Source: Octopus sinensis
Taxonomy: Eukaryota
Reading direction: 5' to 3'
Assembly: GCF_006345805.1 (NCBI RefSeq)
Contig: NW_021828076.1
Location: 1-35,548, forward strand
Length of the DNA stretch: 35,548 nucleotides
A program made the translations under genes and the position numbers. The notes under the pieces were generated by a model. That model did not search any database. It was given only the letters and a program-made list of their open reading frames with translations, and was not told the DNA's origin. This document shows positions 1,454-33,762 of the stretch, one piece after another (positions within the stretch are counted from its first letter, which is position 1; each line of letters starts with the position of its first letter).

Positions 1454-1541
<88 letters not shown>

Positions 1542-1546
1542 ATACA

Positions 1547-1584
<38 letters not shown>

Positions 1585-1589
1585 ATATA

Positions 1590-1621
<32 letters not shown>

Positions 1622-1660
1622 GCATATATATATATATATGCATATATATGCATATATATG
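1337..1660. repeat. (TA)n microsatellite tracts, representative of many others (e.g. 1-125 ACAT, 4420-4700, 4830-4926 TG, 15810-15925 GA, 23738-23818 TAG, 34322-34460 GATA)
   Basis: Seen directly. Confidence 0.95.
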
Positions 1661-2420: not shown

Positions 2421-2456
2421 TATATAAGCTATCACGGCGTTACGAAACTTTATTCT
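2421..2456 (+). promoter_or_regulatory. TATA box (TATATAAG, 2421-2428) and Inr-like TTATTCT (A at 2452)
   Basis: TATA-to-Inr spacing of 31 nt; ATG-free 5' leader up to 2700. Confidence 0.6.
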
Positions 2457-2699
2457 GAAACTTTGACACTCACCAACGAAGTACACAGTGAAATAGTGAA
2501 ATATCTGAAGTGAGAAACACTCGACTTATAAATTCAAATCGAGGAACTTTTTAAAACTAAACTAAACGAAAGAAGGTACAGTGAAATATTTATTTGAACT
2601 TTCATCTAATTTCATACAGACTTCGCTCAGCAATATTGCATAATATCGTCGCTGCCCTGTGAATTTTCTTACCAAACAAATTATTTCTATTTCATCAAC

Positions 2700-3326
2700 A
2701 TGCTTGATAACGAAGTATATTTGAAATACGGACCCTACCGTCGCATTCGCAGAAATGCTTTGGCCAATATAATGGAAGGGTTAAATCAAGAAGCCGTTAA
2801 CTGGCTGTCGAAAAATATTGCACATCAGTCCAATTCGGTTGACCATCGATGTGAGAAATATACTGATGATGAAAGTAACGTTAGTGGTGATGAAGGCGAC
2901 GATGAAAATGAGAATGATGATGACGACGACGATGACGATGCCGGAGGCGTTGAAACCGTCGAAGAAAAAAAAGATGGGAAATATCTGGCTATAGATGAAG
3001 AGAAATCCGTGTTAAATCAGGAAAATAATGAAGGCATTACCTGCCAGAACGATTCTGAATTAAACAAGGCGGATTGTTTCAGACGTCTGAGTTCACCAAT
3101 GGAATGTCGATTCCAGTCGTCATTTGCGGCGATCCGGCGGAATGCTTTACACAATTTATTGGAAACATTAACACCAGCCGAAATCTCAACACTTGGCAAG
3201 TTGTATCAGTTGCAACATTCTGTGAAGGACTTAACTTTAGAACAAGAGCGATTCGATCACTTGGTGACACCTGTTCAATACCCATACATTGAGACATATT
3301 TCGACAAATATTTAACCCAAGTATGA
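2700..3326 (+). CDS. Intronless 208-aa acidic protein with two IRRNAL-x-N-[IL]-[ML]-E-x-L repeats; putative PKA pseudosubstrate (PKI-like) inhibitor
   Basis: Longest non-repeat ORF. A at -3 (caacATG), and no ATG between the predicted TSS (~2452) and 2700. D/E-rich linker. The repeats at aa 16-39 and 145-168 use different codons. RRNA-hydrophobic matches PKI RRNAI/RRNAL. The ORF is well supported; the function is inferred. Confidence 0.8.
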   Translation: MLDNEVYLKYGPYRRIRRNALANIMEGLNQEAVNWLSKNIAHQSNSVDHRCEKYTDDESNVSGDEGDDENENDDDDDDDDAGGVETVEEKKDGKYLAIDEEKSVLNQENNEGITCQNDSELNKADCFRRLSSPMECRFQSSFAAIRRNALHNLLETLTPAEISTLGKLYQLQHSVKDLTLEQERFDHLVTPVQYPYIETYFDKYLTQV

Positions 3327-4208
3327 TTGAAGATATTGTAACAAACGGAAGAGAAAATAAAATCATTTTAAATGTTTTAAAATGCCGAGAAAAAAAAACT
3401 GAAGCATGCGTTTCTATGAAAATTCCTTATCGGTCAAAATTTCTGAAATGAGCAGAAAGAAGAAAGAAATTATACCAAGTAGGGCGAAATGAGATAGAAC
3501 AGGATTTTGTCCATAGAAACAAAGCAACGAACAAACCTTTTTCACTAAAATCTCTGCTCATAAAAAGCAGACGACCGATTGAATGGGCTTACAGAAAATA
3601 TGTATGGTGAGCAGAGATTGTGCATATGTTATGCATTTTGTGTTTTCTCTATTAGCATGCAGTTTCGTTTTGATTAATTTATATATTTTCTGCGTGCGAA
3701 ATATTTGATGACTAACAATTTGTTAACGAGAAATAATGGATAAGAAGCATAAAATGTTTCGAAGTAAACTCTATATTGTTCAAAAGGAAAAAAGAAAAAA
3801 AAACGAACAAAGAAAAGAAAATGGAAGAAAAAAAAATCGACTAACCCGTATTGAATGAGAGACGAAAGAATTTCTTTTTGAATTTTTTTTTAACTGGAAT
3901 GCTTACATAATTCGTTTGCTTATTTATTTACCAAAAGACTCCGAAATATCGAGTAAGAAGATTACCTGTTAAAAACTGAACATTAGAGACAAGTGTGTTC
4001 CTCTGATACACACGCTTGCACACAAAACATTTGTATACCAGACATGTGTATTGGAACTTACTTTTAAAAAGATACCAAAGCATAAACATTTTCTCCCGTT
4101 TGTGTATCATATCTGATATGTCATACAATGATATATATATATGTTATGTGCCACATAAAACAAAGTTTATTGTAACACACACTCACGCAAACACATCAAC
4201 TAAACATG

Positions 4209-16897: not shown

Positions 16898-16935
<38 letters not shown>

Positions 16936-16972
16936 GTAGATAGGTAGGTAGGTAGGTAGGTATGTAGGTAGG

Positions 16973-17031
<59 letters not shown>

Positions 17032-17123
17032 GTAGGTAGGTAGGTAGGTAGGTAGGTAGGTAGGTAGGTAGGTAGATAGATAGATAGATGGATGGATGGA
17101 TGGATGGATAGATAGATAGATAG

Positions 17124-17166
<43 letters not shown>

Positions 17167-17199
17167 GTAGGTAGGTAGGTAGGTAGGTAGGTAGGTAGG

Positions 17200-17250
<51 letters not shown>
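16850..17250. repeat. Compound tetranucleotide microsatellite (GGAA/GATA/GGTA/GGAT)
   Basis: Seen directly. Confidence 0.95.
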
Positions 17251-23973: not shown

Positions 23974-24827
23974 CAAGGTCTGACCAACAAGTATCCGGAC
24001 TGTTGCTGTAGTAACGAAGCTAAAGCACGGAGTGTGAAGCGGCTTGGCACAGATTGACCTTGAACTCTGCTGTACATGAGCATTAAGTTTTAACGCCCTA
24101 GCTCACTTCTGCTGTTTGCAGCAATGCTTGGAAGGAACGTGTGTAACGTGTGATCGCCGTATTGACCATGACAGAGAGAGTTGAGCAGAGAATCTGCATC
24201 AAATTTTACCAAAAGTTTGGCGATACCGGCTCAGAGGACGAGGCAAAGTTTTCAAAAAGTTTTCGTTGTTCTCAACACAATCAAGGAGATCTTGTGCAAC
24301 TGAAACTCGAGTGTCTTTTTGGTCAGCTGAAAGCAGTTTTGGCACAAACACAACAGACATGCGTCTCATACCCAAATCTTCAGTGATAATGGACTGGACC
24401 GAACCGTAACTAATCTGCATATCCTCTGATAACTCACGGATGGTGATTCGACGATTTCCCCTCACAGCTGCACGCACATCTGCGATATTTTTGTCTGTTC
24501 TGCTGGTTGCGGGTCTTCCAGAACGTTCATCAATATCGATATTTTTTCGGCCATCTTGAAAACGTCTGAATCACTCGTACATTTGTGTACGGTTCATACA
24601 CTTCCCTCCATAGACTTTCTGCAAGTTCGAGCAGGCCTCTGAGCAGGTATTGCCATGAAAGCTTTCTCTGTCATAGTCAATGCGACGATCACACGCTACA
24701 CACCTTCCTTCCAAGTACTGCACATGCACAGCAGAGTTCAAGGTTAATCTGTGCCAAGTGACTTCACTCTGCGTGCTTTAGCTTCGTTACTATGGCAACA
24801 GTCCGGATACTTATTGATCAGACCTCA
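23974..24827. mobile_element. Tc1/mariner relic made of two inverted left ends with transposase N-terminal fragments
   Basis: Long inverted ends (aggtctga.caa.aagtatccggactgttgc...), TA at 24828-24829. The minus strand encodes DERSGRPATS..RRITIRELSEDMQISYGSVQSIITEDLGMRR..FVPKLL; the plus strand encodes MTERVEQRICIKF. Confidence 0.9.
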
Positions 24828-26099: not shown

Positions 26100-26600
26100 G
26101 AGTATGCATGTATATATGCATGCATGTATATATATTTATGTATGCAAGCATGGATACATGTATACATGTAGGTATGAATGCGTGTATGTATGCATGTAAG
26201 CATTATGTATGCGTTTATGTATGTATGCACACAAGTATGCATGTATGTATGTATGTATGTATGTGTTTATGTAGGTATGTATGTATGTATGTACACATGT
26301 ATGCATGTATGTATGTGTTTATGTAGGTATGTATGCATGTATATATGTATGCAACGTATGTATATATGAATGCATGAATGTATGCATGTATGCAAGTATA
26401 TATGTATGTATACTTTATTGAAATGCATGTATGTACGTATGAATATATATATGTATGTATGTATGTATGTACGTACGTACGTATGTATGTATGTGTGTGT
26501 GTATGTATGTATGTATGCATGCATGCATGTATGTATGTATGTATGTATGCATGTATGTATGTATGTATGTATGTATGTATGTATGTATGTATGTACATAT
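26100..26600. repeat. Degenerate (TATG)n microsatellite
   Basis: Seen directly; source of many spurious ORFs. Confidence 0.95.
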
Positions 26601-27242
26601 GTATGGAGCTCATTATTTCTTGAATCTGTGTTAGACTCTACAGTATACGATAGACAGACATTACCTTGACCTTAGTCTGCACAATTTTACTCCACTATTA
26701 CTATAACTGCATAACGAAACAAAAGACCAAGTTCTGCTAAACTAAAATATTATAATTATCACACCATACGTTACACTAGTTTACTTCAATATCCGTATTT
26801 CTCTTTCAAATATTTACATTTTAATTTAGTGCTATGCTTTAAACACAAAGATTACAACTGGCTGTTTTTTTCGTACAATGTAGTAGTTTCTTTATTCTTT
26901 TGTTCTTGCTCCACTCATTACTAATTGTTATGGCACACTTCTTTGAAATTTCTATTGTTTAAGTCACATGGCTTGGCTTTTATCTAGTTACCGTCGTAGA
27001 AGAAATTTGGCTGCGGAGAAAAAAAAAATCATTAAACCGTTCCTTAGAGTTATTTTTCCCGGCACAAAAGCGAATAAATACATATGTTAAAAAAAAAAGG
27101 AATAAAAAACTGTTATTTATTTAGTTTGTTGTGACCTTGTATTGTTTTATTTTCCAGTTCAATCCTACATGTTTTCCATGATGTCATTTTACTTTGTGTT
27201 CTAATTTGTTACTTATTTACTTCTATATTTTTGTTCAAAGGA

Positions 27243-28242
27243 AGGCGGCGAGCTGGCAGAAACGATAGCACGCCGGGCGAGGTGCTGAGCGGTGTTTCGT
27301 CTGCCGTTACGTTCTGAGTTCAAATTCCGCTGAGGTCGACTTTGCCTTTCATCCATTCGGGGTCGATAAATTAAGTACCAGTTACGCACTAGGGTCGATG
27401 TAATTGGCCTAATCCGTTTGTCTGTCCTTGTTTGTCCCCTCTATGTTTAGCCCCTTGTAGGCAATAAAGAAATAAGAAACGTTAGCACGCCGGGTAAAAT
27501 GCTTAGCAGTATTTCGTCTGCCGCTACGTTCTGAGTTTAAATTCCGCCGAGGTCGGCTTTGCCTTTCATCCTTTCGGGGTCGATAAATTAAGTATCAGTT
27601 ACGCACTGGGGTCGATGTAATCGACTTAATCCCTTTGTCTCTCCTTGTTTGTCCCTCTGTGTTTAGCCCCTTCTGGGTAGTAAAGAAATAGGTATTTCGT
27701 CTGTCGTAACGTTTTGAGTTCAAATTCTGCCAAGGTCGACTTTGCCTTTCATCCTCTCGGAGTCGATTAAATAAGTACCAGTTACGCACTGGGGTCGATA
27801 TAATCGACTTAATCCCTTTGTCTCTCCTTGTTTGTCCCCTCTGTGTTTAGCCCCTTCTGGGTAGTAAAGAAATAGGTATTTCGTTTGTCGTTACGTTCTG
27901 AGTTCAAATTCCGCCGAGGTCGACTTTGCCTTTCATCCTCTCGGGGTCGATTAAATAAGTACCAGTTACGCACTGGGGTCGGTATAATCGACTTAATCTG
28001 TTTGTCTCTCCTTGTTTGTCCCCTCTGTGTTTAGCCCCTTGTGGGTAGTAAAGAAATAGGTATTTCGTCTGTCGTTACGCTCTGAGTTCAAATTCTGCCG
28101 AGGTCGACTTTGTCTTTCATCCTTTCGGGGTAGATAAATAAAGTACCAGTTTCGCAATTGGGTCGTTGTAATCGACTTAATCCTTTTGTATGTCCTTGTT
28201 TGTCCCCTCTATGTTTAGCCCCTTGTGAATAATAAAGAAATA
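27243..28242 (+). mobile_element. Head-to-tail array of five SINE family A units
   Basis: Units 27243-27474, 27475-27690, 27691-27874, 27875-28058 and 28059-28242. Confidence 0.9.
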
Positions 28243-28473
28243 TATATTTTTGTTCAAATTTTAATTTATTTTATTTTTTTCTTGGATTTAATGATTGTAT
28301 ATGACCCTAGGTTAGTTCGGATCGAACGGATTTATGATCAAAAATATTCCAACTGCAAGAGACCGACACTTTTTTCTCAGATATTGTTTATCCTTGGCTT
28401 ACCTTATTTAATGTATCCTTCCTCGCATGGCTTTTAAGATAATAGGCAAGATCGGCGCGGGCAGGATGTTATC

Positions 28474-30102: not shown

Positions 30103-30464
30103 TAGTATATTTTTTATATCGTGCTTTCACTTCACTACCGAGCGCAGCTCTGTGTGCCTTAGGTATGTGCTGTGATTTGTTGTGATGCTCTAATGGTTAT
30201 TGTATGGAAAGTGTTTTGCGTAGGATGTGTGCAGTGCCTAGTAGTGCAATTTTCTGTATGTTATATGTGTTTGTAAGTCCTGGTGTTTTTGTTATGTATT
30301 TGTCTGAATATTTTTTTATCATGCCTAATGCACCTACTATGATAGGAATTGTTTCTGTTTTTAGATTCCACATTCTGGTTACTTCTATTTCCAGGTCTTT
30401 GTATTTTGAGAGTTTCTCCATTTCTTTTAGAGACACGTTGTCATCTGCCGGTATTGATACATCA

Positions 30465-30466
<2 letters not shown>
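30100..30466 (-). mobile_element. R4/Dong-clade LINE 3' end no. 1 (restriction-like endonuclease C-terminus)
   Basis: IDVSIPADDNVSLKEMEKLSKYKDLEIEVTRMW..IPIIVGALG..QKIALLGTAHILRK; flanked by (ATT)n on both sides. Confidence 0.85.
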
Positions 30467-30526
<60 letters not shown>

Positions 30527-30540
30527 CATTATTATTATTT

Positions 30541-30839: not shown

Positions 30840-32696
30840 GACGTCGCACAGTATACAATATCGTGAGGTTGTTGATTGGAGATTTCTGTCTACTGGGGGT
30901 TTTACTGTTTGTCAAGTCATAACAAGGACCTCAGACAGACAGTACTTTACGCAATATGCGTGCAGTTCCAAGTAATGCTGACTTTTGCAATGCATCAAGA
31001 TTGTAGGGTATTTCTAAGGTTTTCAGATATCTTTTCAGGCTGGGTGGTATTGAACCCAATGCTCCAATGACAATAGGGATAAACTTTATGTTTGACTCTC
31101 GTAGCTGCCACATCTTAGCGATCTCAATTCTCAGGTCTCCATATTTATCACCTTTTCTCTTTCTTTCATGATGATATGTTGATCCCCTGGCACTGCCACG
31201 TTCATTATTAGGCACTCTTGTTTGTCTCTCCTAAAGGTTACTATATCCGATCCTCGGTGTTCTAACACCTTGTCTGTCTGGAAATCAAAGTCCCAGAGGA
31301 TTTTTGCCTTCCCCTTTTCGTCCATTTCCTTTTTTGGTGTATGTTGGTACCAACACTCGTAACCTCATATCCATACTTACGGCATAGTAGCCAGTGGAGG
31401 TTTTGGGCTACCTTGTTGTGTCTATGCTTGTACTCTTTCTGCGCAAGACTTTCACAAGCACTAACAATGTGAGTCACGCTTTTGAACCGCTTCCCACATA
31501 TTTTGCCGAGGATCGATGCACTAATATGGTATATATTCTTTTTCACTGAGTTGGTATTCAATGCCTGGTCCTGGACAGCGATGATTAGGCTTTCAGTATT
31601 CTTTTTTAGGTCACCCTTGTTGAGCCACTTCCATGATACTTCCTGGTCTTTTAATTTGTTGGTTTCACAGTGGAACTGACCATGTAATTCAATACGGAGT
31701 AGGGTTTCTTCTTTCTCGTTGGCTGTTCTTGATCAGAATTCATGAGCACTCACAAGTCAATTTTTGTTTACTCCTTCTGTACTAGCATCATATTATATGA
31801 GGTCTTGTTTGCTACTTACCAAATAGACTACCATGTTTCTTCTTTCATTGTTGATGCACTCCCGTAAGCTAATCAGCACACTTCCACCTTTACTTCTCTT
31901 CATAGAGCCTATATGCAGTTGCCTTAGGGTGGAGGGCACCATGCATTGTCACAGTCTTTCGTGTAGTGCGATCGAGTTGGGTGGACTATAGCGTACTACA
32001 GCAACAGCACATGTGCTGATGGCAGTCACAAAGTTCCTTGAGTTGAGCTTTGATTTCAAGAGACGTTTGAGGCGCTTGAAATATGCAGTGATGAACGTGT
32101 CTTTCATTTTTTTTTTGTGCAAGATATTGTCCAGCTCCAGGATCCCGAGGTACTTGTACCCATCTCCATTCGGGTCTTCCATTCCCTTTCCGTTTGGCAA
32201 TTCTATGCTCTACAATTAATTCTTTTCCCCCGCTTCAAAGTAAACACTGCACACTTAGAGATATTGAATTCCATCCCTATATCCTTGCTGCACATTTGCA
32301 CAGTCTCAACCAGCCTCTCCATTTCAGGCTCTGTTTTTGCGAACAGTTTTAAATCATCCATGAAGAGAGAATGTGGTTGAGGCGTGGTCTTTTCTTTCTC
32401 AGCTCATAGTGCACACTGATTTTACGTAGGACTACAGAAAGTGGGATCAAGGCTATAACAAATAACAGAGGTGAACAAGAGTCTCCTTGGAAGACACCTC
32501 TTTTGATTGTTACCTCGGCTAAGTGCTGGTTGTTACAGGAAAGACACGTTTTCAAATAGGCATGCTGTTTTTAAGCAGTACACACACGTTCTCAGCTATT
32601 CCACACATGTCGAGTGTTTCCAAAATCCACGAATGCAGCAACTTGTCGTAAGCCTTTTTGAAGTCTATCCAGGCCATGCTTAAGCTTTTTGGTACC
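30839..32696 (-). mobile_element. R4/Dong-clade LINE no. 3, 5'-truncated, with RT, zinc knuckle and RLE pseudo-ORF
   Basis: AWIDFKKAYD, GVFQGDSCSPLLF, LFMDDLKLF, YKYLGILE, C..CG..ESVTHIVSAC, ILWDF..QTD, IPIVIGALG, QKSALLGTARILRKVL; multiple frameshifts. Confidence 0.9.
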
Positions 32697-33309: not shown

Positions 33310-33350
33310 GATGCATGCACGCGCACATACATACAAACATATATACCTAC

Positions 33351-33381
<31 letters not shown>

Positions 33382-33731
33382 CATACATACCCGTAAAGGC
33401 AGATATACACACATATATACAAACACATACACACATATATACACACACATACACACATACATACGTACGTGCATACATACAAACAAACCTACGTATACAC
33501 ACACATACACATATATATGTAGGCAAAAACATACACACATAAACGCATACATACATGCATATATACACACATACACACATACATACTTACATACATACAC
33601 ATACATACACAAATACATACAAACGTACCCATACGTATATGCATGTATACATACACACATACACACATACACATTCAACGTACAAAGATACATACATAAT
33701 ACATACATACATACATACATACATACATACA

Positions 33732-33760
<29 letters not shown>
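33310..33760. repeat. (ACAT)n/(AC)n compound microsatellite
   Basis: Seen directly. Confidence 0.95.

Positions 33761-33762
<2 letters not shown>

What the first reader, a model, noticed from the sequence alone, without database searches (positions are those of the whole stretch)
2700..3326. Candidate two-headed PKI-like PKA pseudosubstrate inhibitor
Seen: the ORF contains a gap-free internal repeat, RIRRNALANIMEGLNQEAVNWLSK (aa 15-38) versus AIRRNALHNLLETLTPAEISTLGK (aa 144-167). The two copies use different codons and are separated by a D/E-rich linker. Known: PKI proteins inhibit the PKA catalytic subunit through R-R-N-A-hydrophobic (PKIalpha F-x4-R-x2-RRNAIHDIL), with determinants Phe at P-11, Arg at P-6, Arg at P-3 and P-2, and a hydrophobic P+1. 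Motif 1 (nt 2739-2771) has Arg at P-6 and Tyr at P-10. Motif 2 (nt 3111-3161) has Phe exactly at P-11 and ALHNLL versus PKI AIHDIL. Classical PKIs are about 75 aa with one site. Inference: a 208-aa bivalent inhibitor that could bind two catalytic subunits, possibly lineage-specific.
Basis: partly seen in the sequence, partly recalled or inferred. Interest (0 to 1): 0.88.

Follow-up and report, generated by a model that had tools for sequence, protein, structure and literature searches.

The report
Two-motif PKI-like octopus protein
A single-exon Octopus vulgaris gene encodes a mostly disordered 208-residue protein, conserved in cephalopods, that carries two copies of the RRNA-hydrophobic decoy-substrate signature by which PKI proteins block protein kinase A; it is probably a two-headed relative of that inhibitor, but no binding has been tested.

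Summary
The ORF at 2700-3326 (+) encodes 208 aa with an ancient, gap-free internal repeat (11/24 identical; no shuffle of 500 reaches its score). The gene is under purifying selection. It belongs to a small, unannotated cephalopod family with two paralogue types, plus one divergent sequence from an unidentified organism. Every member has an N-terminal and a C-terminal module. Across 14 non-redundant module copies the only invariant residues are R-R-N-A, the PKI pseudosubstrate core, followed by hydrophobic-x-[D/N]-[I/L] as in PKI.

No Pfam family passes threshold. PKI (PF02827) is the best hit for 7 of 8 proteins scanned (all seven relatives; 12-20.7 bits against a cut-off of 25), but the window protein itself is not reported. 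Profile-profile comparison with vertebrate PKIs gives P=2e-7 for the C module and 7e-5 for the N module, ungapped from P-11 to P+5 and far above column-shuffle nulls. PKI-alpha chains are the top three hits in the whole PDB.

The PKI high-affinity determinants (aromatic at P-11, Arg at P-6) are split between the two motifs in this protein. A class-1a NES pattern follows motif 2. The N module also resembles vertebrate TCIM/TC-1, below threshold.

Verdict: a new two-motif variant of the PKI kind, function inferred and not shown.

The parts
2421..2427 (+). TATA-like box (TATATAA), about 275 nt upstream of the ATG; candidate core promoter
   Evidence: Pattern search. A 1412-nt contig from another octopus (L009) is colinear with window 2474-3836 and so starts about 40 nt downstream of this box. 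This is inference only.
2700..3326 (+). Single-exon CDS, 208 aa, of an unannotated ('uncharacterized/hypothetical') cephalopod protein
   Evidence: ORF. Annotated as a single-exon 208-aa gene in O. vulgaris GCA_951406725.2, OX597815.1. Orthologues are 94-60% identical. dN/dS is 0.17-0.45 overall. Contigs from other species are colinear, with no intron.
2739..2783 (+). Motif 1: R14(P-6) R15 I16 R17 R18 N19 A20(P0) L21(P+1) A N I M E G L; PKI-type pseudosubstrate candidate (core RRNAL = nt 2748-2762)
   Evidence: Register table. RRNA is invariant in all N modules. hhalign of N modules against PKI: P=6.9e-5, score 25.1, against a null of 8.7+/-2.1.
2748..2831 (+). N-terminal helix-turn-helix module (aa 17-27 and 30-44)
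   Evidence: AlphaFold2: helices H17-27 and H30-44, block pLDDT 76-81. dN/dS is 0-0.13. It resembles TCIM aa 32-54.
2832..3074 (+). Disordered linker (aa 45-125) with a D/E-rich run (aa 55-81, nt 2862-2942)
   Evidence: pLDDT 33-48 with no secondary structure. dN/dS is 0.35-0.56. In the type-B paralogues it is replaced by a Ser-rich linker.
3081..3098 (+). R128-R129-L-S131-S132-P133: a PKA-consensus phospho-site (RRxS) overlapping a conserved Ser-Pro site
   Evidence: Regex over the family. S132 is invariant in alignment A2. RRLS/RRFS occurs in four of the five octopod type-A proteins (P0002 has SRLS) and in none of the others.
3111..3170 (+). Motif 2: F138(P-11) Q S S F A A I R146 R147 N148 A149(P0) L150(P+1) H N L L E T L; PKI-type pseudosubstrate candidate (core RRNAL = nt 3135-3149)
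   Evidence: Register table. RRNALH.L is invariant in all relatives. hhalign of C modules against PKI: P=2.2e-7, probability 93.6%, score 36.2, against a null of 8.3+/-1.8.
3114..3230 (+). C-terminal helix-turn-helix module (aa 139-156 and 159-177)
   Evidence: AlphaFold2: H139-156 and H159-177, block pLDDT 78-81 for aa 151-170. dN/dS against Argonauta is 0.02-0.07.
3210..3239 (+). L171-QHS-V175-KD-L178-T-L180: class-1a nuclear-export-signal pattern
   Evidence: Regex. It is conserved in all five octopod orthologues and starts at P+22, against P+16 in PKI alpha, beta and gamma. This is a pattern match only.
3246..3323 (+). Conserved C-terminal tail ERFDHLVTPVQYPYIETYFDKYLTQV, ending in T-Q-V-COOH
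   Evidence: YPYIETYFDKYLTQV is invariant from Octopus to Argonauta. It has low pLDDT. Its fit to a class I PDZ ligand is my own reading, not a test.
3356..3361 (+). AATAAA, the first polyadenylation-signal hexamer after the stop codon
   Evidence: Pattern search. Its use was not shown.

Best explanation

Each head is a linear R-R-N-A-(L/M)-x-(D/N)-(I/L) segment. It would lie in the active-site cleft as a non-phosphorylatable substrate mimic: the two Arg bind the acidic P-3/P-2 pockets, Ala sits at the phospho-acceptor position, and Leu fills the P+1 pocket. A short helix-turn-helix follows immediately and would give extra docking on the kinase large lobe.

The C-terminal head, together with the leucine-rich export-type pattern about 22 residues further on, looks like a complete PKI unit (inhibitory site plus NES). 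The N-terminal head is an extra copy, joined by an acidic flexible linker of about 100 residues. The protein could therefore hold two catalytic subunits at once, or rebind one with higher avidity.

Shown here: the gene is real and constrained; the duplication is ancient; RRNA is the only invariant element of both modules; and the modules match the PKI inhibitory region better than anything else in Pfam or the PDB. Inferred: binding to PKA-C, inhibition, 1:2 stoichiometry and nuclear export.
For: 1. The gene is real and constrained. Orthologues run from Octopus to Argonauta. dN/dS is 0-0.13 in the N module, 0.02-0.07 in the C module against Argonauta (0.30-0.49 among the closer octopus pairs), and 0.35-0.56 in the linker.

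2. The family always has two motifs. There are two paralogue types, both present in O. bimaculoides (A0A0L8HRC2 and A0A0L8HSK0) and in another cephalopod-like assembly, plus a divergent protein from a coding exon of about 100 codons. Each has both motifs.

3. Over 14 non-redundant module copies the only invariant columns are R, R, N, A. P0 is never Ser or Thr, P+1 is always L or M, P+3 is D or N, and P+4 is I or L. This is the PKI pattern: RRNA[ILV][HP]DI.

4. Pfam PKI (PF02827) is the best or only hit for all seven relatives scanned (7 of the 8 proteins in that scan, E down to 5.4e-4). In P0005 both motifs are matched.

5. hhalign against 12 vertebrate PKIs gives C module P=2.2e-7 (93.6%) and N module P=6.9e-5, ungapped from P-11 to P+5. 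In column-shuffle controls 0 of 300 reach the observed scores: 36.2 against a maximum of 15.0, and 25.1 against a maximum of 16.6.

6. An unbiased profile search of 177,635 PDB sequences returns PKI-alpha chains as the top three hits.

7. PKI's high-affinity determinants recur in register. F is at P-11 in the window's C motif and in the N motifs of P0018, P0005 and P0017. R is at P-6 in the window's N motif and in type-B N motifs. The type-B N motifs of P0005 and P0017 have the full F-x4-R-x2-RRNA-hydrophobic set (P0010 has R at P-6 but L at P-11).

8. A class-1a NES pattern lies downstream of motif 2, as in PKI alpha, beta and gamma.

9. RRxA-hydrophobic is the accepted PKA-C pseudosubstrate consensus and works when embedded in unrelated proteins (ARHGAP36, PMC5059767; SMO, 10.1101/2021.07.05.451193). 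Mollusc PKA-C is highly conserved (PMC3625193). PKI(14-22) inhibits the PKA activity of another lophotrochozoan (PMC2724707). PKI homologues are reported in invertebrates (PMC4674680).
Against: No family member reaches the Pfam PKI gathering score (best 20.7 against 25 bits). The window protein and its O. bimaculoides orthologue, which have N152 instead of D, give no reported hit.

In this protein neither motif has the full PKI determinant set. Motif 1 has K at P-11 (Tyr is at P-10). Motif 2 has Ala at P-6. The P-11 aromatic shifts by one residue in Argonauta and in P0018. From my own knowledge, bare RRxA-hydrophobic peptides are weak inhibitors.

AlphaFold2 puts the residues from about P-3 (motif 1) or P-10 (motif 2) onward into helices, whereas PKA substrates bind extended between P-3 and P+1. 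The RRNA core does lie in the lower-confidence blocks, pLDDT 50-56.

Conservation extends far beyond the PKI-like stretch (LLETLTxxExxxLxxLY), which points to an additional or different partner.

The N module matches TCIM/TC-1 aa 32-54 about as well as it matches PKI.

No binding, activity, expression or complex-modelling evidence could be obtained with these tools.
Confidence: 0.55

Rival explanations
1. The two modules are helix-turn-helix protein-interaction units of a small acidic cofactor of the TCIM/TC-1 type (for example a nuclear or Wnt-pathway adaptor). In this reading RRNA is the N-cap of an amphipathic helix, and the likeness to PKI is convergent or reflects only very remote ancestry. 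The protein would bind a non-kinase partner through the hydrophobic face at P+1, P+4, P+5 and P+8.
For: AlphaFold2 predicts a confident helix-turn-helix starting at or just after RRNA in both modules. The conserved block extends about 25 residues past the PKI-like part. The N module matches human TCIM aa 32-54 with hhalign P=2.4e-5, score 28.2, against a null of 9.2+/-2.0 and a maximum of 16.4. Pfam TC1 is the second most frequent family hit. Both TCIM and this gene are intronless and disordered (PMC5349172).
Against: Pfam TC1 is far below its cut-off (12.5 against 27 bits) and hits only 1-2 members. Corrected for the whole database, the match is not significant. TCIM has RKKA, whereas RRNA is the one invariant element of all 14 module copies. 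The C module does not match TCIM (11 of 200 shuffles reach its score). An N-cap role does not explain invariant Arg-Arg together with Ala at the exact PKI positions, nor the recurring aromatic at P-11 and Arg at P-6.
Confidence: 0.24
2. The motifs are pseudosubstrates, but for a different basophilic kinase: cGMP-dependent kinase, PRKX, or another AGC or CaMK kinase that prefers R-R-x-S/T-hydrophobic. Alternatively, the two heads address two different kinases.
For: The RRxA-hydrophobic core fits several Arg-directed kinases (general knowledge). The two heads differ consistently in their flanks: basic P-5/P-6 in the N motif, and SF at P-8/P-7 with H at P+2 in the C motif. That difference would fit distinct targets.
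Against: Asn at P-1 followed by [H/x]-[D/N]-[I/L] is the PKI-specific signature. It is absent from the RI-alpha, ARHGAP36 and SMO type sites, which read RRGA (PMC5059767). PKI is described as selective for PKA (PMC2724707, PMC7878667 abstract). Nothing here points to a specific alternative kinase.
Confidence: 0.12
3. The ORF is a chance open frame or a pseudogene in repeat-rich DNA, and the repeat is meaningless.
For: The surrounding 35 kb is microsatellite-rich and has no other recognisable gene. No expression data were available.
Against: The intact ORF is conserved from Octopus to Argonauta with dS up to about 1.2 and dN/dS of 0.17-0.19. The modules are far more constrained than the linker. 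Paralogues and more distant relatives keep the same architecture. The gene is annotated in two genomes.
Confidence: 0.01

Closest known systems
PKI alpha/beta/gamma, the heat-stable cAMP-dependent protein kinase inhibitors (Pfam PF02827)
   Same: The core R-R-N-A-[ILV]-[HP]-D-I matches: the octopod C motif is RRNALHDLL, against RRNALHDIL in reptile, bird and frog PKI-alpha. An aromatic at P-11 and Arg at P-6 occur in register in family members. A class-1a NES pattern lies downstream. Both are disordered, acidic proteins. PKI is the best Pfam and PDB match.
   Different: This protein has two inhibitory-type motifs instead of one, and is 208-251 aa instead of about 75. It is below the Pfam cut-off. 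Each motif is followed by a conserved helix-turn-helix that PKI lacks. In the window protein the high-affinity determinants are split between the motifs. The conserved C-terminal tail is absent from PKI.
PKI-like pseudosubstrate motifs embedded in other proteins: ARHGAP36 (RRGAV), the Smoothened C-tail, and PKA RI-alpha (RRGAI)
   Same: They show the same principle: a short RRxA-hydrophobic decoy inside a larger, otherwise unrelated or disordered protein blocks the PKA-C active site (PMC5059767; 10.1101/2021.07.05.451193).
   Different: Those sites have Gly at P-1, occur as single copies, and lack the H-D-[IL] continuation. They sit in large multidomain proteins. There is no sequence relationship beyond the consensus.
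Inka1, an endogenous PAK4 inhibitor
   Same: It is a precedent for a small endogenous kinase inhibitor with a duplicated substrate-mimicking inhibitory box (iBox and iBox-C), each active on its own (PMC4674680).
   Different: It targets a different kinase, uses a different motif (Pro at P0, PLV), and has no sequence similarity.
TCIM / TC-1 / C8orf4 (Pfam PF15063)
   Same: TCIM aa 32-54 (RKKAVGNIFENTDQESLERLFRN) aligns without gaps to the window's RRNALANIMEGLNQEAVNWLSKN, with 39% identity and hhalign P=2.4e-5. It is also small, disordered and intronless (PMC5349172).
   Different: TCIM has RKKA and not RRNA, and a single module. It is reported only from jawed vertebrates. The Pfam score is far below the cut-off. 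No other part of either protein matches.

Membership tests
PKI (PF02827, cAMP-dependent protein kinase inhibitor) | Scores at or above the Pfam gathering threshold (25 bits) | tested here: not met
   The window protein and P0001 gave no hit reported at E<=10. Relatives scored 12.0-20.7 bits.
PKI (PF02827, cAMP-dependent protein kinase inhibitor) | Pseudosubstrate core R(P-3)-R(P-2)-N-A(P0)-hydrophobic(P+1), with a non-phosphorylatable P0 | tested here: met
   Present twice (aa 17-21 and 146-150). RRNA is invariant in all 14 non-redundant module copies, and P+1 is L or M.
PKI (PF02827, cAMP-dependent protein kinase inhibitor) | High-affinity determinants upstream: aromatic at P-11 in an amphipathic helix, and Arg at P-6 | tested here: inconclusive
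   The window's motif 1 has R at P-6 but K at P-11 (Y at P-10). Motif 2 has F at P-11 but A at P-6. Both are present together in the type-B N motifs of P0005 and P0017. The register drifts by one residue in Argonauta and P0018.
PKI (PF02827, cAMP-dependent protein kinase inhibitor) | Leucine-rich NES downstream of the inhibitory site | tested here: inconclusive
   The class-1a pattern LQHSVKDLTL lies at P+22 and is conserved in octopod orthologues. Related patterns occur in P0018, and none in type B. Such patterns are common in helices, and export was not tested.
PKI (PF02827, cAMP-dependent protein kinase inhibitor) | Small (about 75 aa) protein with a single inhibitory site | tested here: not met
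   208 aa with two sites. PKIs retrieved here are 75-78 aa in their canonical forms.
PKI (PF02827, cAMP-dependent protein kinase inhibitor) | Profile-level similarity to the PKI inhibitory region beyond chance | tested here: met
   hhalign P=2.2e-7 (C module) and 6.9e-5 (N module). No column shuffle of 300 reaches the observed scores. PKI-alpha chains are the top three PDB hits.
PKI (PF02827, cAMP-dependent protein kinase inhibitor) | Competitive, MgATP-dependent, nanomolar inhibition of PKA-C | not testable with these tools
   This needs biochemistry. Complex prediction with PKA-C was not possible, because only window-derived or retrieved sequences may be submitted.
TC1 / TCIM (PF15063) | Scores at or above the Pfam gathering threshold (27 bits) | tested here: not met
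   The best score is 12.5 bits (P0010). The window protein gave no hit.
TC1 / TCIM (PF15063) | Similarity along the TC-1 domain (about 75-80 residues) | tested here: not met
   Only TCIM aa 32-54 aligns, to the N module. The C module is not significant, and nothing else aligns.

The most novel reading that the evidence does not exclude
The cephalopod two-module family may be a surviving intermediate linking two vertebrate families thought to be unrelated. Its C module corresponds to PKI (pseudosubstrate plus NES). Its N module corresponds to TCIM/TC-1, whose conserved RKKAVGNIFEN segment would then be a degenerate PKI-type pseudosubstrate. That would mean that TC-1, an orphan 'vertebrate-specific' oncogenic disordered protein, descends from a kinase decoy and may still dock on a basophilic kinase. 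It would also mean that bivalent PKA-C sequestration is an ancestral bilaterian mechanism retained in cephalopods.
Probability: 0.1. Interest if true: 0.8.

Novelty: new variant of a known kind. Interest (0 to 1): 0.6.

Why it matters
PKA is the central kinase of molluscan synaptic plasticity, and PKI is its only dedicated small protein inhibitor. Invertebrate PKI-like proteins are essentially unstudied.

A conserved cephalopod family with two PKI-type decoy sites on one flexible chain would be the first natural bivalent member of this inhibitor class. It could sequester or export two free catalytic subunits per molecule, or hold one with higher avidity.

It also gives a directly testable pair of peptides, and mutants (RR to AA, A to S), for probing cephalopod cAMP signalling. 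The sub-threshold link of the N module to TCIM/TC-1 could give a first mechanistic lead for that orphan vertebrate protein.

If the motifs do not bind PKA-C, the family remains a conserved, unannotated disordered protein with an unexplained invariant RRNA signature.

Tried and rejected
- Single-sequence phmmer searches of the PDB, with the whole protein and with the C module alone, returned only low-complexity or leucine-rich noise.
- Pfam hits to eIF-3c_N, Nop14, DNA_pol_phi, Cwf15 and DUF2457 come from the D/E-rich linker. Hits to DED, SAM_EPH and 4HB_MCP are single weak helix matches (E 0.015-0.2) in one member each. All were rejected.
- P0008 and P0009 from the representative search reach E around 1e-5 only by summing 5-10 tandem copies of a short similar peptide. 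They lack RRNA and were not counted as family members.
- The bacterial-type promoter/terminator scan is irrelevant to an animal gene.
- Rfam and tRNA scans of the window found nothing.
- Full-text searches for 'RRNAL' and for PKI in molluscs or cephalopods found nothing relevant.
- A JGI metagenome scan with the pattern [IVT]RRNALH[DN]L found no relative.
- The third protein search, with human PKI alpha/beta/gamma, listed only vertebrate PKIs in its best 120. So I could not establish whether cephalopods also have a canonical single-site PKI.
- Structure comparison (Foldseek) was not run, because the model (mean pLDDT 49.9, pTM 0.18) is too poor to give meaningful matches.
- Other ORFs in the window gave no credible Pfam hit.
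Full report
**What is in the sequence.** Window 2700-3326 (+) is a clean ATG-to-TGA ORF of 208 codons. The nearest upstream in-frame stop is at 2607, and no other ATG lies between it and M1. The start context has A at -3. A TATATAA box lies at 2421 and the first AATAAA after the stop is at 3356.

The window comes from the Octopus vulgaris reference assembly GCA_951406725.2, chromosome OX597815.1. There the same 208-aa product is annotated as a single-exon gene, with no other gene called within 10 kb on either side. The rest of the 35-kb window is microsatellite-rich. It shows no other credible coding region, RNA family or tRNA.

**The observation.** The repeat is as described. Residues 15-38 and 144-167 align without gaps, with 11/24 identities and a BLOSUM62 score of 50. 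The best ungapped local match between the two halves scores 52. In 500 shuffles the score was 25.2 +/- 4.1 with a maximum of 45. At the DNA level the copies are only 37/72 identical, and six of the eleven identical residues use different codons. This is therefore an old duplication maintained at protein level.

**It is a real, constrained gene.**
- Orthologues exist in O. bimaculoides (A0A0L8HRC2, 'uncharacterized', 94%), in two other octopuses known from sequencing-run assemblies (81-85%), and in Argonauta hians ('hypothetical protein', 60%).
- Contigs from the other species are colinear with the window over 1.4-2.1 kb, so there is no intron.
- Nei-Gojobori dN/dS is 0.17-0.45 overall. It is 0-0.13 in the N-terminal module, 0.02-0.07 in the C-terminal module against Argonauta, and 0.35-0.56 in the linker.

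**The family.**
- A profile search of 1.84 billion representative proteins found only seven proteins at E<=0.001. A word-indexed profile search found eleven at E<=10.
- After removing two tandem-repeat artefacts (P0008, P0009), what remains is a small family with two paralogue types.
- Type A is the window protein and a 213-aa relative, P0018/P0007.
- Type B is O. bimaculoides A0A0L8HSK0 (251 aa) and P0005/P0017/P0011, which have a Ser-rich linker in place of the acidic one.
- A more divergent protein (P0020/P0021), encoded on a coding exon of about 100 codons, comes from an unidentified assembly.
- Types A and B coexist in O. bimaculoides and in the sample ERZ21867824.
- None of these proteins carries a functional name in any source.

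**What is conserved.**
- Across 14 non-redundant module copies the only invariant columns are R, R, N and A.
- In register (A = P0), P+1 is always L or M, P+3 is D or N, P+4 is I or L, and P+5 is hydrophobic in all but one of the 20 motif copies tabulated (Gly in the P0021 C motif). P0 is never Ser or Thr.
- That is the PKI pattern. PKI-alpha has RRNAIHDIL, or RRNALHDIL in reptiles, birds and frogs. PKI-beta has RRNALPDI and PKI-gamma has RRNAVPDI.
- The octopod C motif is RRNALHDLL in most orthologues. O. vulgaris and O. bimaculoides have N at P+3.
- The upstream PKI determinants also recur in register. F is at P-11 in the window's C motif and in the N motifs of P0018, P0005 and P0017. R is at P-6 in the window's N motif and in type-B N motifs. 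The type-B N motifs of P0005 and P0017 therefore carry the complete F-x4-R-x2-RRNA-hydrophobic set (P0010 has L at P-11).
- In the window protein these determinants are split. Motif 1 has R at P-6 but K at P-11 (Y at P-10). Motif 2 has F at P-11 but A at P-6. The aromatic moves to P-10 in Argonauta and to P-12 in P0018.

**Tests of the PKI relationship.**
- No Pfam family passes its threshold for any member. PKI (PF02827) is nevertheless the best or only hit for all seven relatives scanned (7 of the 8 proteins in that scan). Scores are 12.0-20.7 bits against a gathering score of 25, with E down to 5.4e-4 against the whole library. Both motifs are matched in P0005.
- The window protein and its closest orthologue give no reported PKI hit.
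- Profile-profile comparison of the register-fixed modules with 12 vertebrate PKIs gives P=2.2e-7 (probability 93.6%) for the C module and P=6.9e-5 for the N module. In both cases the alignment is ungapped from P-11 to P+5. An earlier comparison with only three human PKIs gave P=1.1e-4.
- Column-shuffled versions of the same alignments never came close. The C module scored 36.2 against 8.3 +/- 1.8 (maximum 15.0). The N module scored 25.1 against 8.7 +/- 2.1 (maximum 16.6). In both, 0 of 300 shuffles reached the observed score.
- A profile of the 14 module copies, searched against all 177,635 distinct PDB sequences, returned PKI-alpha chains as the top three hits: 1cmk_I at E=0.015, 3wyg_D at 0.14, and 1apm_I at 0.77.
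- The motif-level relationship is therefore robust. Formal family membership is not established.

**Structure.** AlphaFold2 with a 10-sequence alignment gives a poor global model (mean pLDDT 49.9, pTM 0.18). Only two elements have moderate confidence, and each is a helix-turn-helix: H17-27 plus H30-44, and H139-156 plus H159-177, with block pLDDT of 76-81. The linker (45-138) and the tail are disordered. The RRNA cores fall in the lower-confidence blocks (pLDDT 50-56), at or before the start of the confident helices. This is compatible with an extended decoy followed by a helical hairpin, but it does not prove it. There is no sign that the two modules pack together.

**Other features.**
- A class-1a NES pattern (L171-x3-V-x2-L-x-L180) is conserved in all octopod orthologues. 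It starts at P+22, against P+16 in PKI alpha, beta and gamma.
- R128-R-L-S131 is a PKA phospho-acceptor consensus in four of the five octopod type-A proteins (P0002 has SRLS). The adjacent S132-P133 is conserved across the family.
- The octopod tail YPYIETYFDKYLTQV is invariant. It ends in a T-x-V-COOH that fits a class I PDZ ligand. That last point is my own reading.

**Mechanism proposed.** Each RRNA-hydrophobic segment would occupy the PKA-C active-site cleft as a non-phosphorylatable substrate mimic, as shown for PKI, RI-alpha, ARHGAP36 and Smoothened (PMC5059767; 10.1101/2021.07.05.451193; PMC7723848). The following helical hairpin would supply additional docking. The C-terminal module with its NES-like pattern would act as a PKI-type inhibit-and-export unit. 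The N-terminal module, on an acidic tether of about 100 residues, would allow a second catalytic subunit to be bound, or the same one to be rebound.

Background supports plausibility. Mollusc PKA-C is a single, highly conserved gene (PMC3625193). PKI(14-22) inhibits the PKA activity of another lophotrochozoan (PMC2724707). PKI homologues are said to exist in many invertebrates (PMC4674680). Inka1 is a precedent for an endogenous kinase inhibitor with two functional inhibitory boxes (PMC4674680). Every functional step remains inference.

**A competing lead.** Pfam TC1 (PF15063) was the second most frequent sub-threshold hit. Its aa 32-54 (RKKAVGNIFENTDQESLERLFRN) aligns without gaps to the window's aa 17-39, with hhalign P=2.4e-5. 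The score was 28.2, against a null of 9.2 +/- 2.0 with a maximum of 16.4 (0 of 200 shuffles reach it).

The C module and PKI do not match TCIM significantly, although their best alignments pick the same register. This comparison was chosen after seeing the Pfam list. Corrected for the library size it is borderline. TCIM also lacks the invariant RRNA. TC-1 is described as restricted to jawed vertebrates, and as intronless and disordered (PMC5349172). I treat this as a rival or complementary reading, not as membership.

**Verdict.** This is a conserved, unannotated cephalopod protein family with two PKI-type pseudosubstrate signatures per chain. It is most likely a bivalent regulator of PKA-C (confidence about 0.55). 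It is a new variant of a known kind and not a member of Pfam PKI by the curated threshold. Binding, inhibition, stoichiometry, export and expression all remain to be shown.

Noticed in passing
window 2748-2816 (aa 17-39): The N-terminal module aligns without gaps to human TCIM/TC-1 aa 32-54 (RKKAVGNIFENTDQESLERLFRN). hhalign gives P=2.4e-5, and no column shuffle of 200 reaches the score. Pfam TC1 is only sub-threshold. TC-1 is regarded as specific to jawed vertebrates.
   Followed up: partly
window 3081-3098 (aa 128-133): RRLS131-S132-P133 is a PKA phospho-acceptor consensus (four of the five octopod type-A proteins; P0002 has SRLS) overlapping a Ser-Pro site conserved across the family. It lies 18 residues upstream of the second RRNA motif, so the protein may be both a substrate and a decoy.
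   Followed up: partly
window 3279-3323 (aa 194-208): The tail YPYIETYFDKYLTQV is invariant from Octopus to Argonauta and ends in T-Q-V-COOH, which fits a class I PDZ-binding consensus. The relative P0018 has a similar F-G-K-F-A-T-H-V stretch, but not at its C terminus.
   Followed up: no
window 27258-28249: A tandem array of a 184-217-bp unit (2-4 copies, 88-91% matches) contains GTTCAAATTCCGCCGAGGTCGAC, which looks like a tRNA-derived SINE. ARAGORN finds no tRNA and Rfam finds nothing.
   Followed up: partly
window 1457-1659, 16898-17249, 26102-26605, 33325-33761: There are very long microsatellites: (AT)103, (AGAT)88, (GTAT)126 and (ACAT)111. They generate most of the long spurious ORFs in the window.
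   Followed up: yes
window 30197-30529 (-) and 31134-31364 (-): Two non-repetitive ORF fragments (for example ...ILWDFDFQTDKVLEHRGSDIVTF... and ...EVTRMWNLKTETIPIIVGALGMI...) are flanked by poly-Ile/AAT microsatellite. They look like a decayed transposable-element coding remnant. They have no Pfam hit.
   Followed up: partly
window 24574-24777 (-): A short ORF has a weak hit to the HTH domain of Mos1-type transposases (HTH_48, E=0.059). It may be a mariner relic.
   Followed up: no
P0008 (831 aa) and P0009 (496 aa), from the representative search: These proteins of unknown origin contain 10 tandem copies of TRDCLHNMLDTLAPADDG (like ALHNLLETLTPAE, but without RRNA) and 5 copies of ERFTHLVIPxQHP (like ERFDHLVTPVQYP of the tail). 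They are probably translated repeats, but the resemblance to two separate conserved segments is curious.
   Followed up: no
L002 4883 and 5217 (ENA ERZ21867824, ctg123221l): In this contig the N and C motifs of the type-A relative lie in different reading frames. This is a frameshift or an assembly error, because the 213-aa version P0018 from another source is intact.
   Followed up: partly
L001 5001-5459 (ENA ERZ25069859): The most divergent relative (P0021) appears to start after a splice acceptor (TTTTTTCTTTTGTTTTTAG). Its two RRNA motifs are only 55 residues apart, and it lacks the LLETLT continuation. The source organism was not identified.
   Followed up: partly
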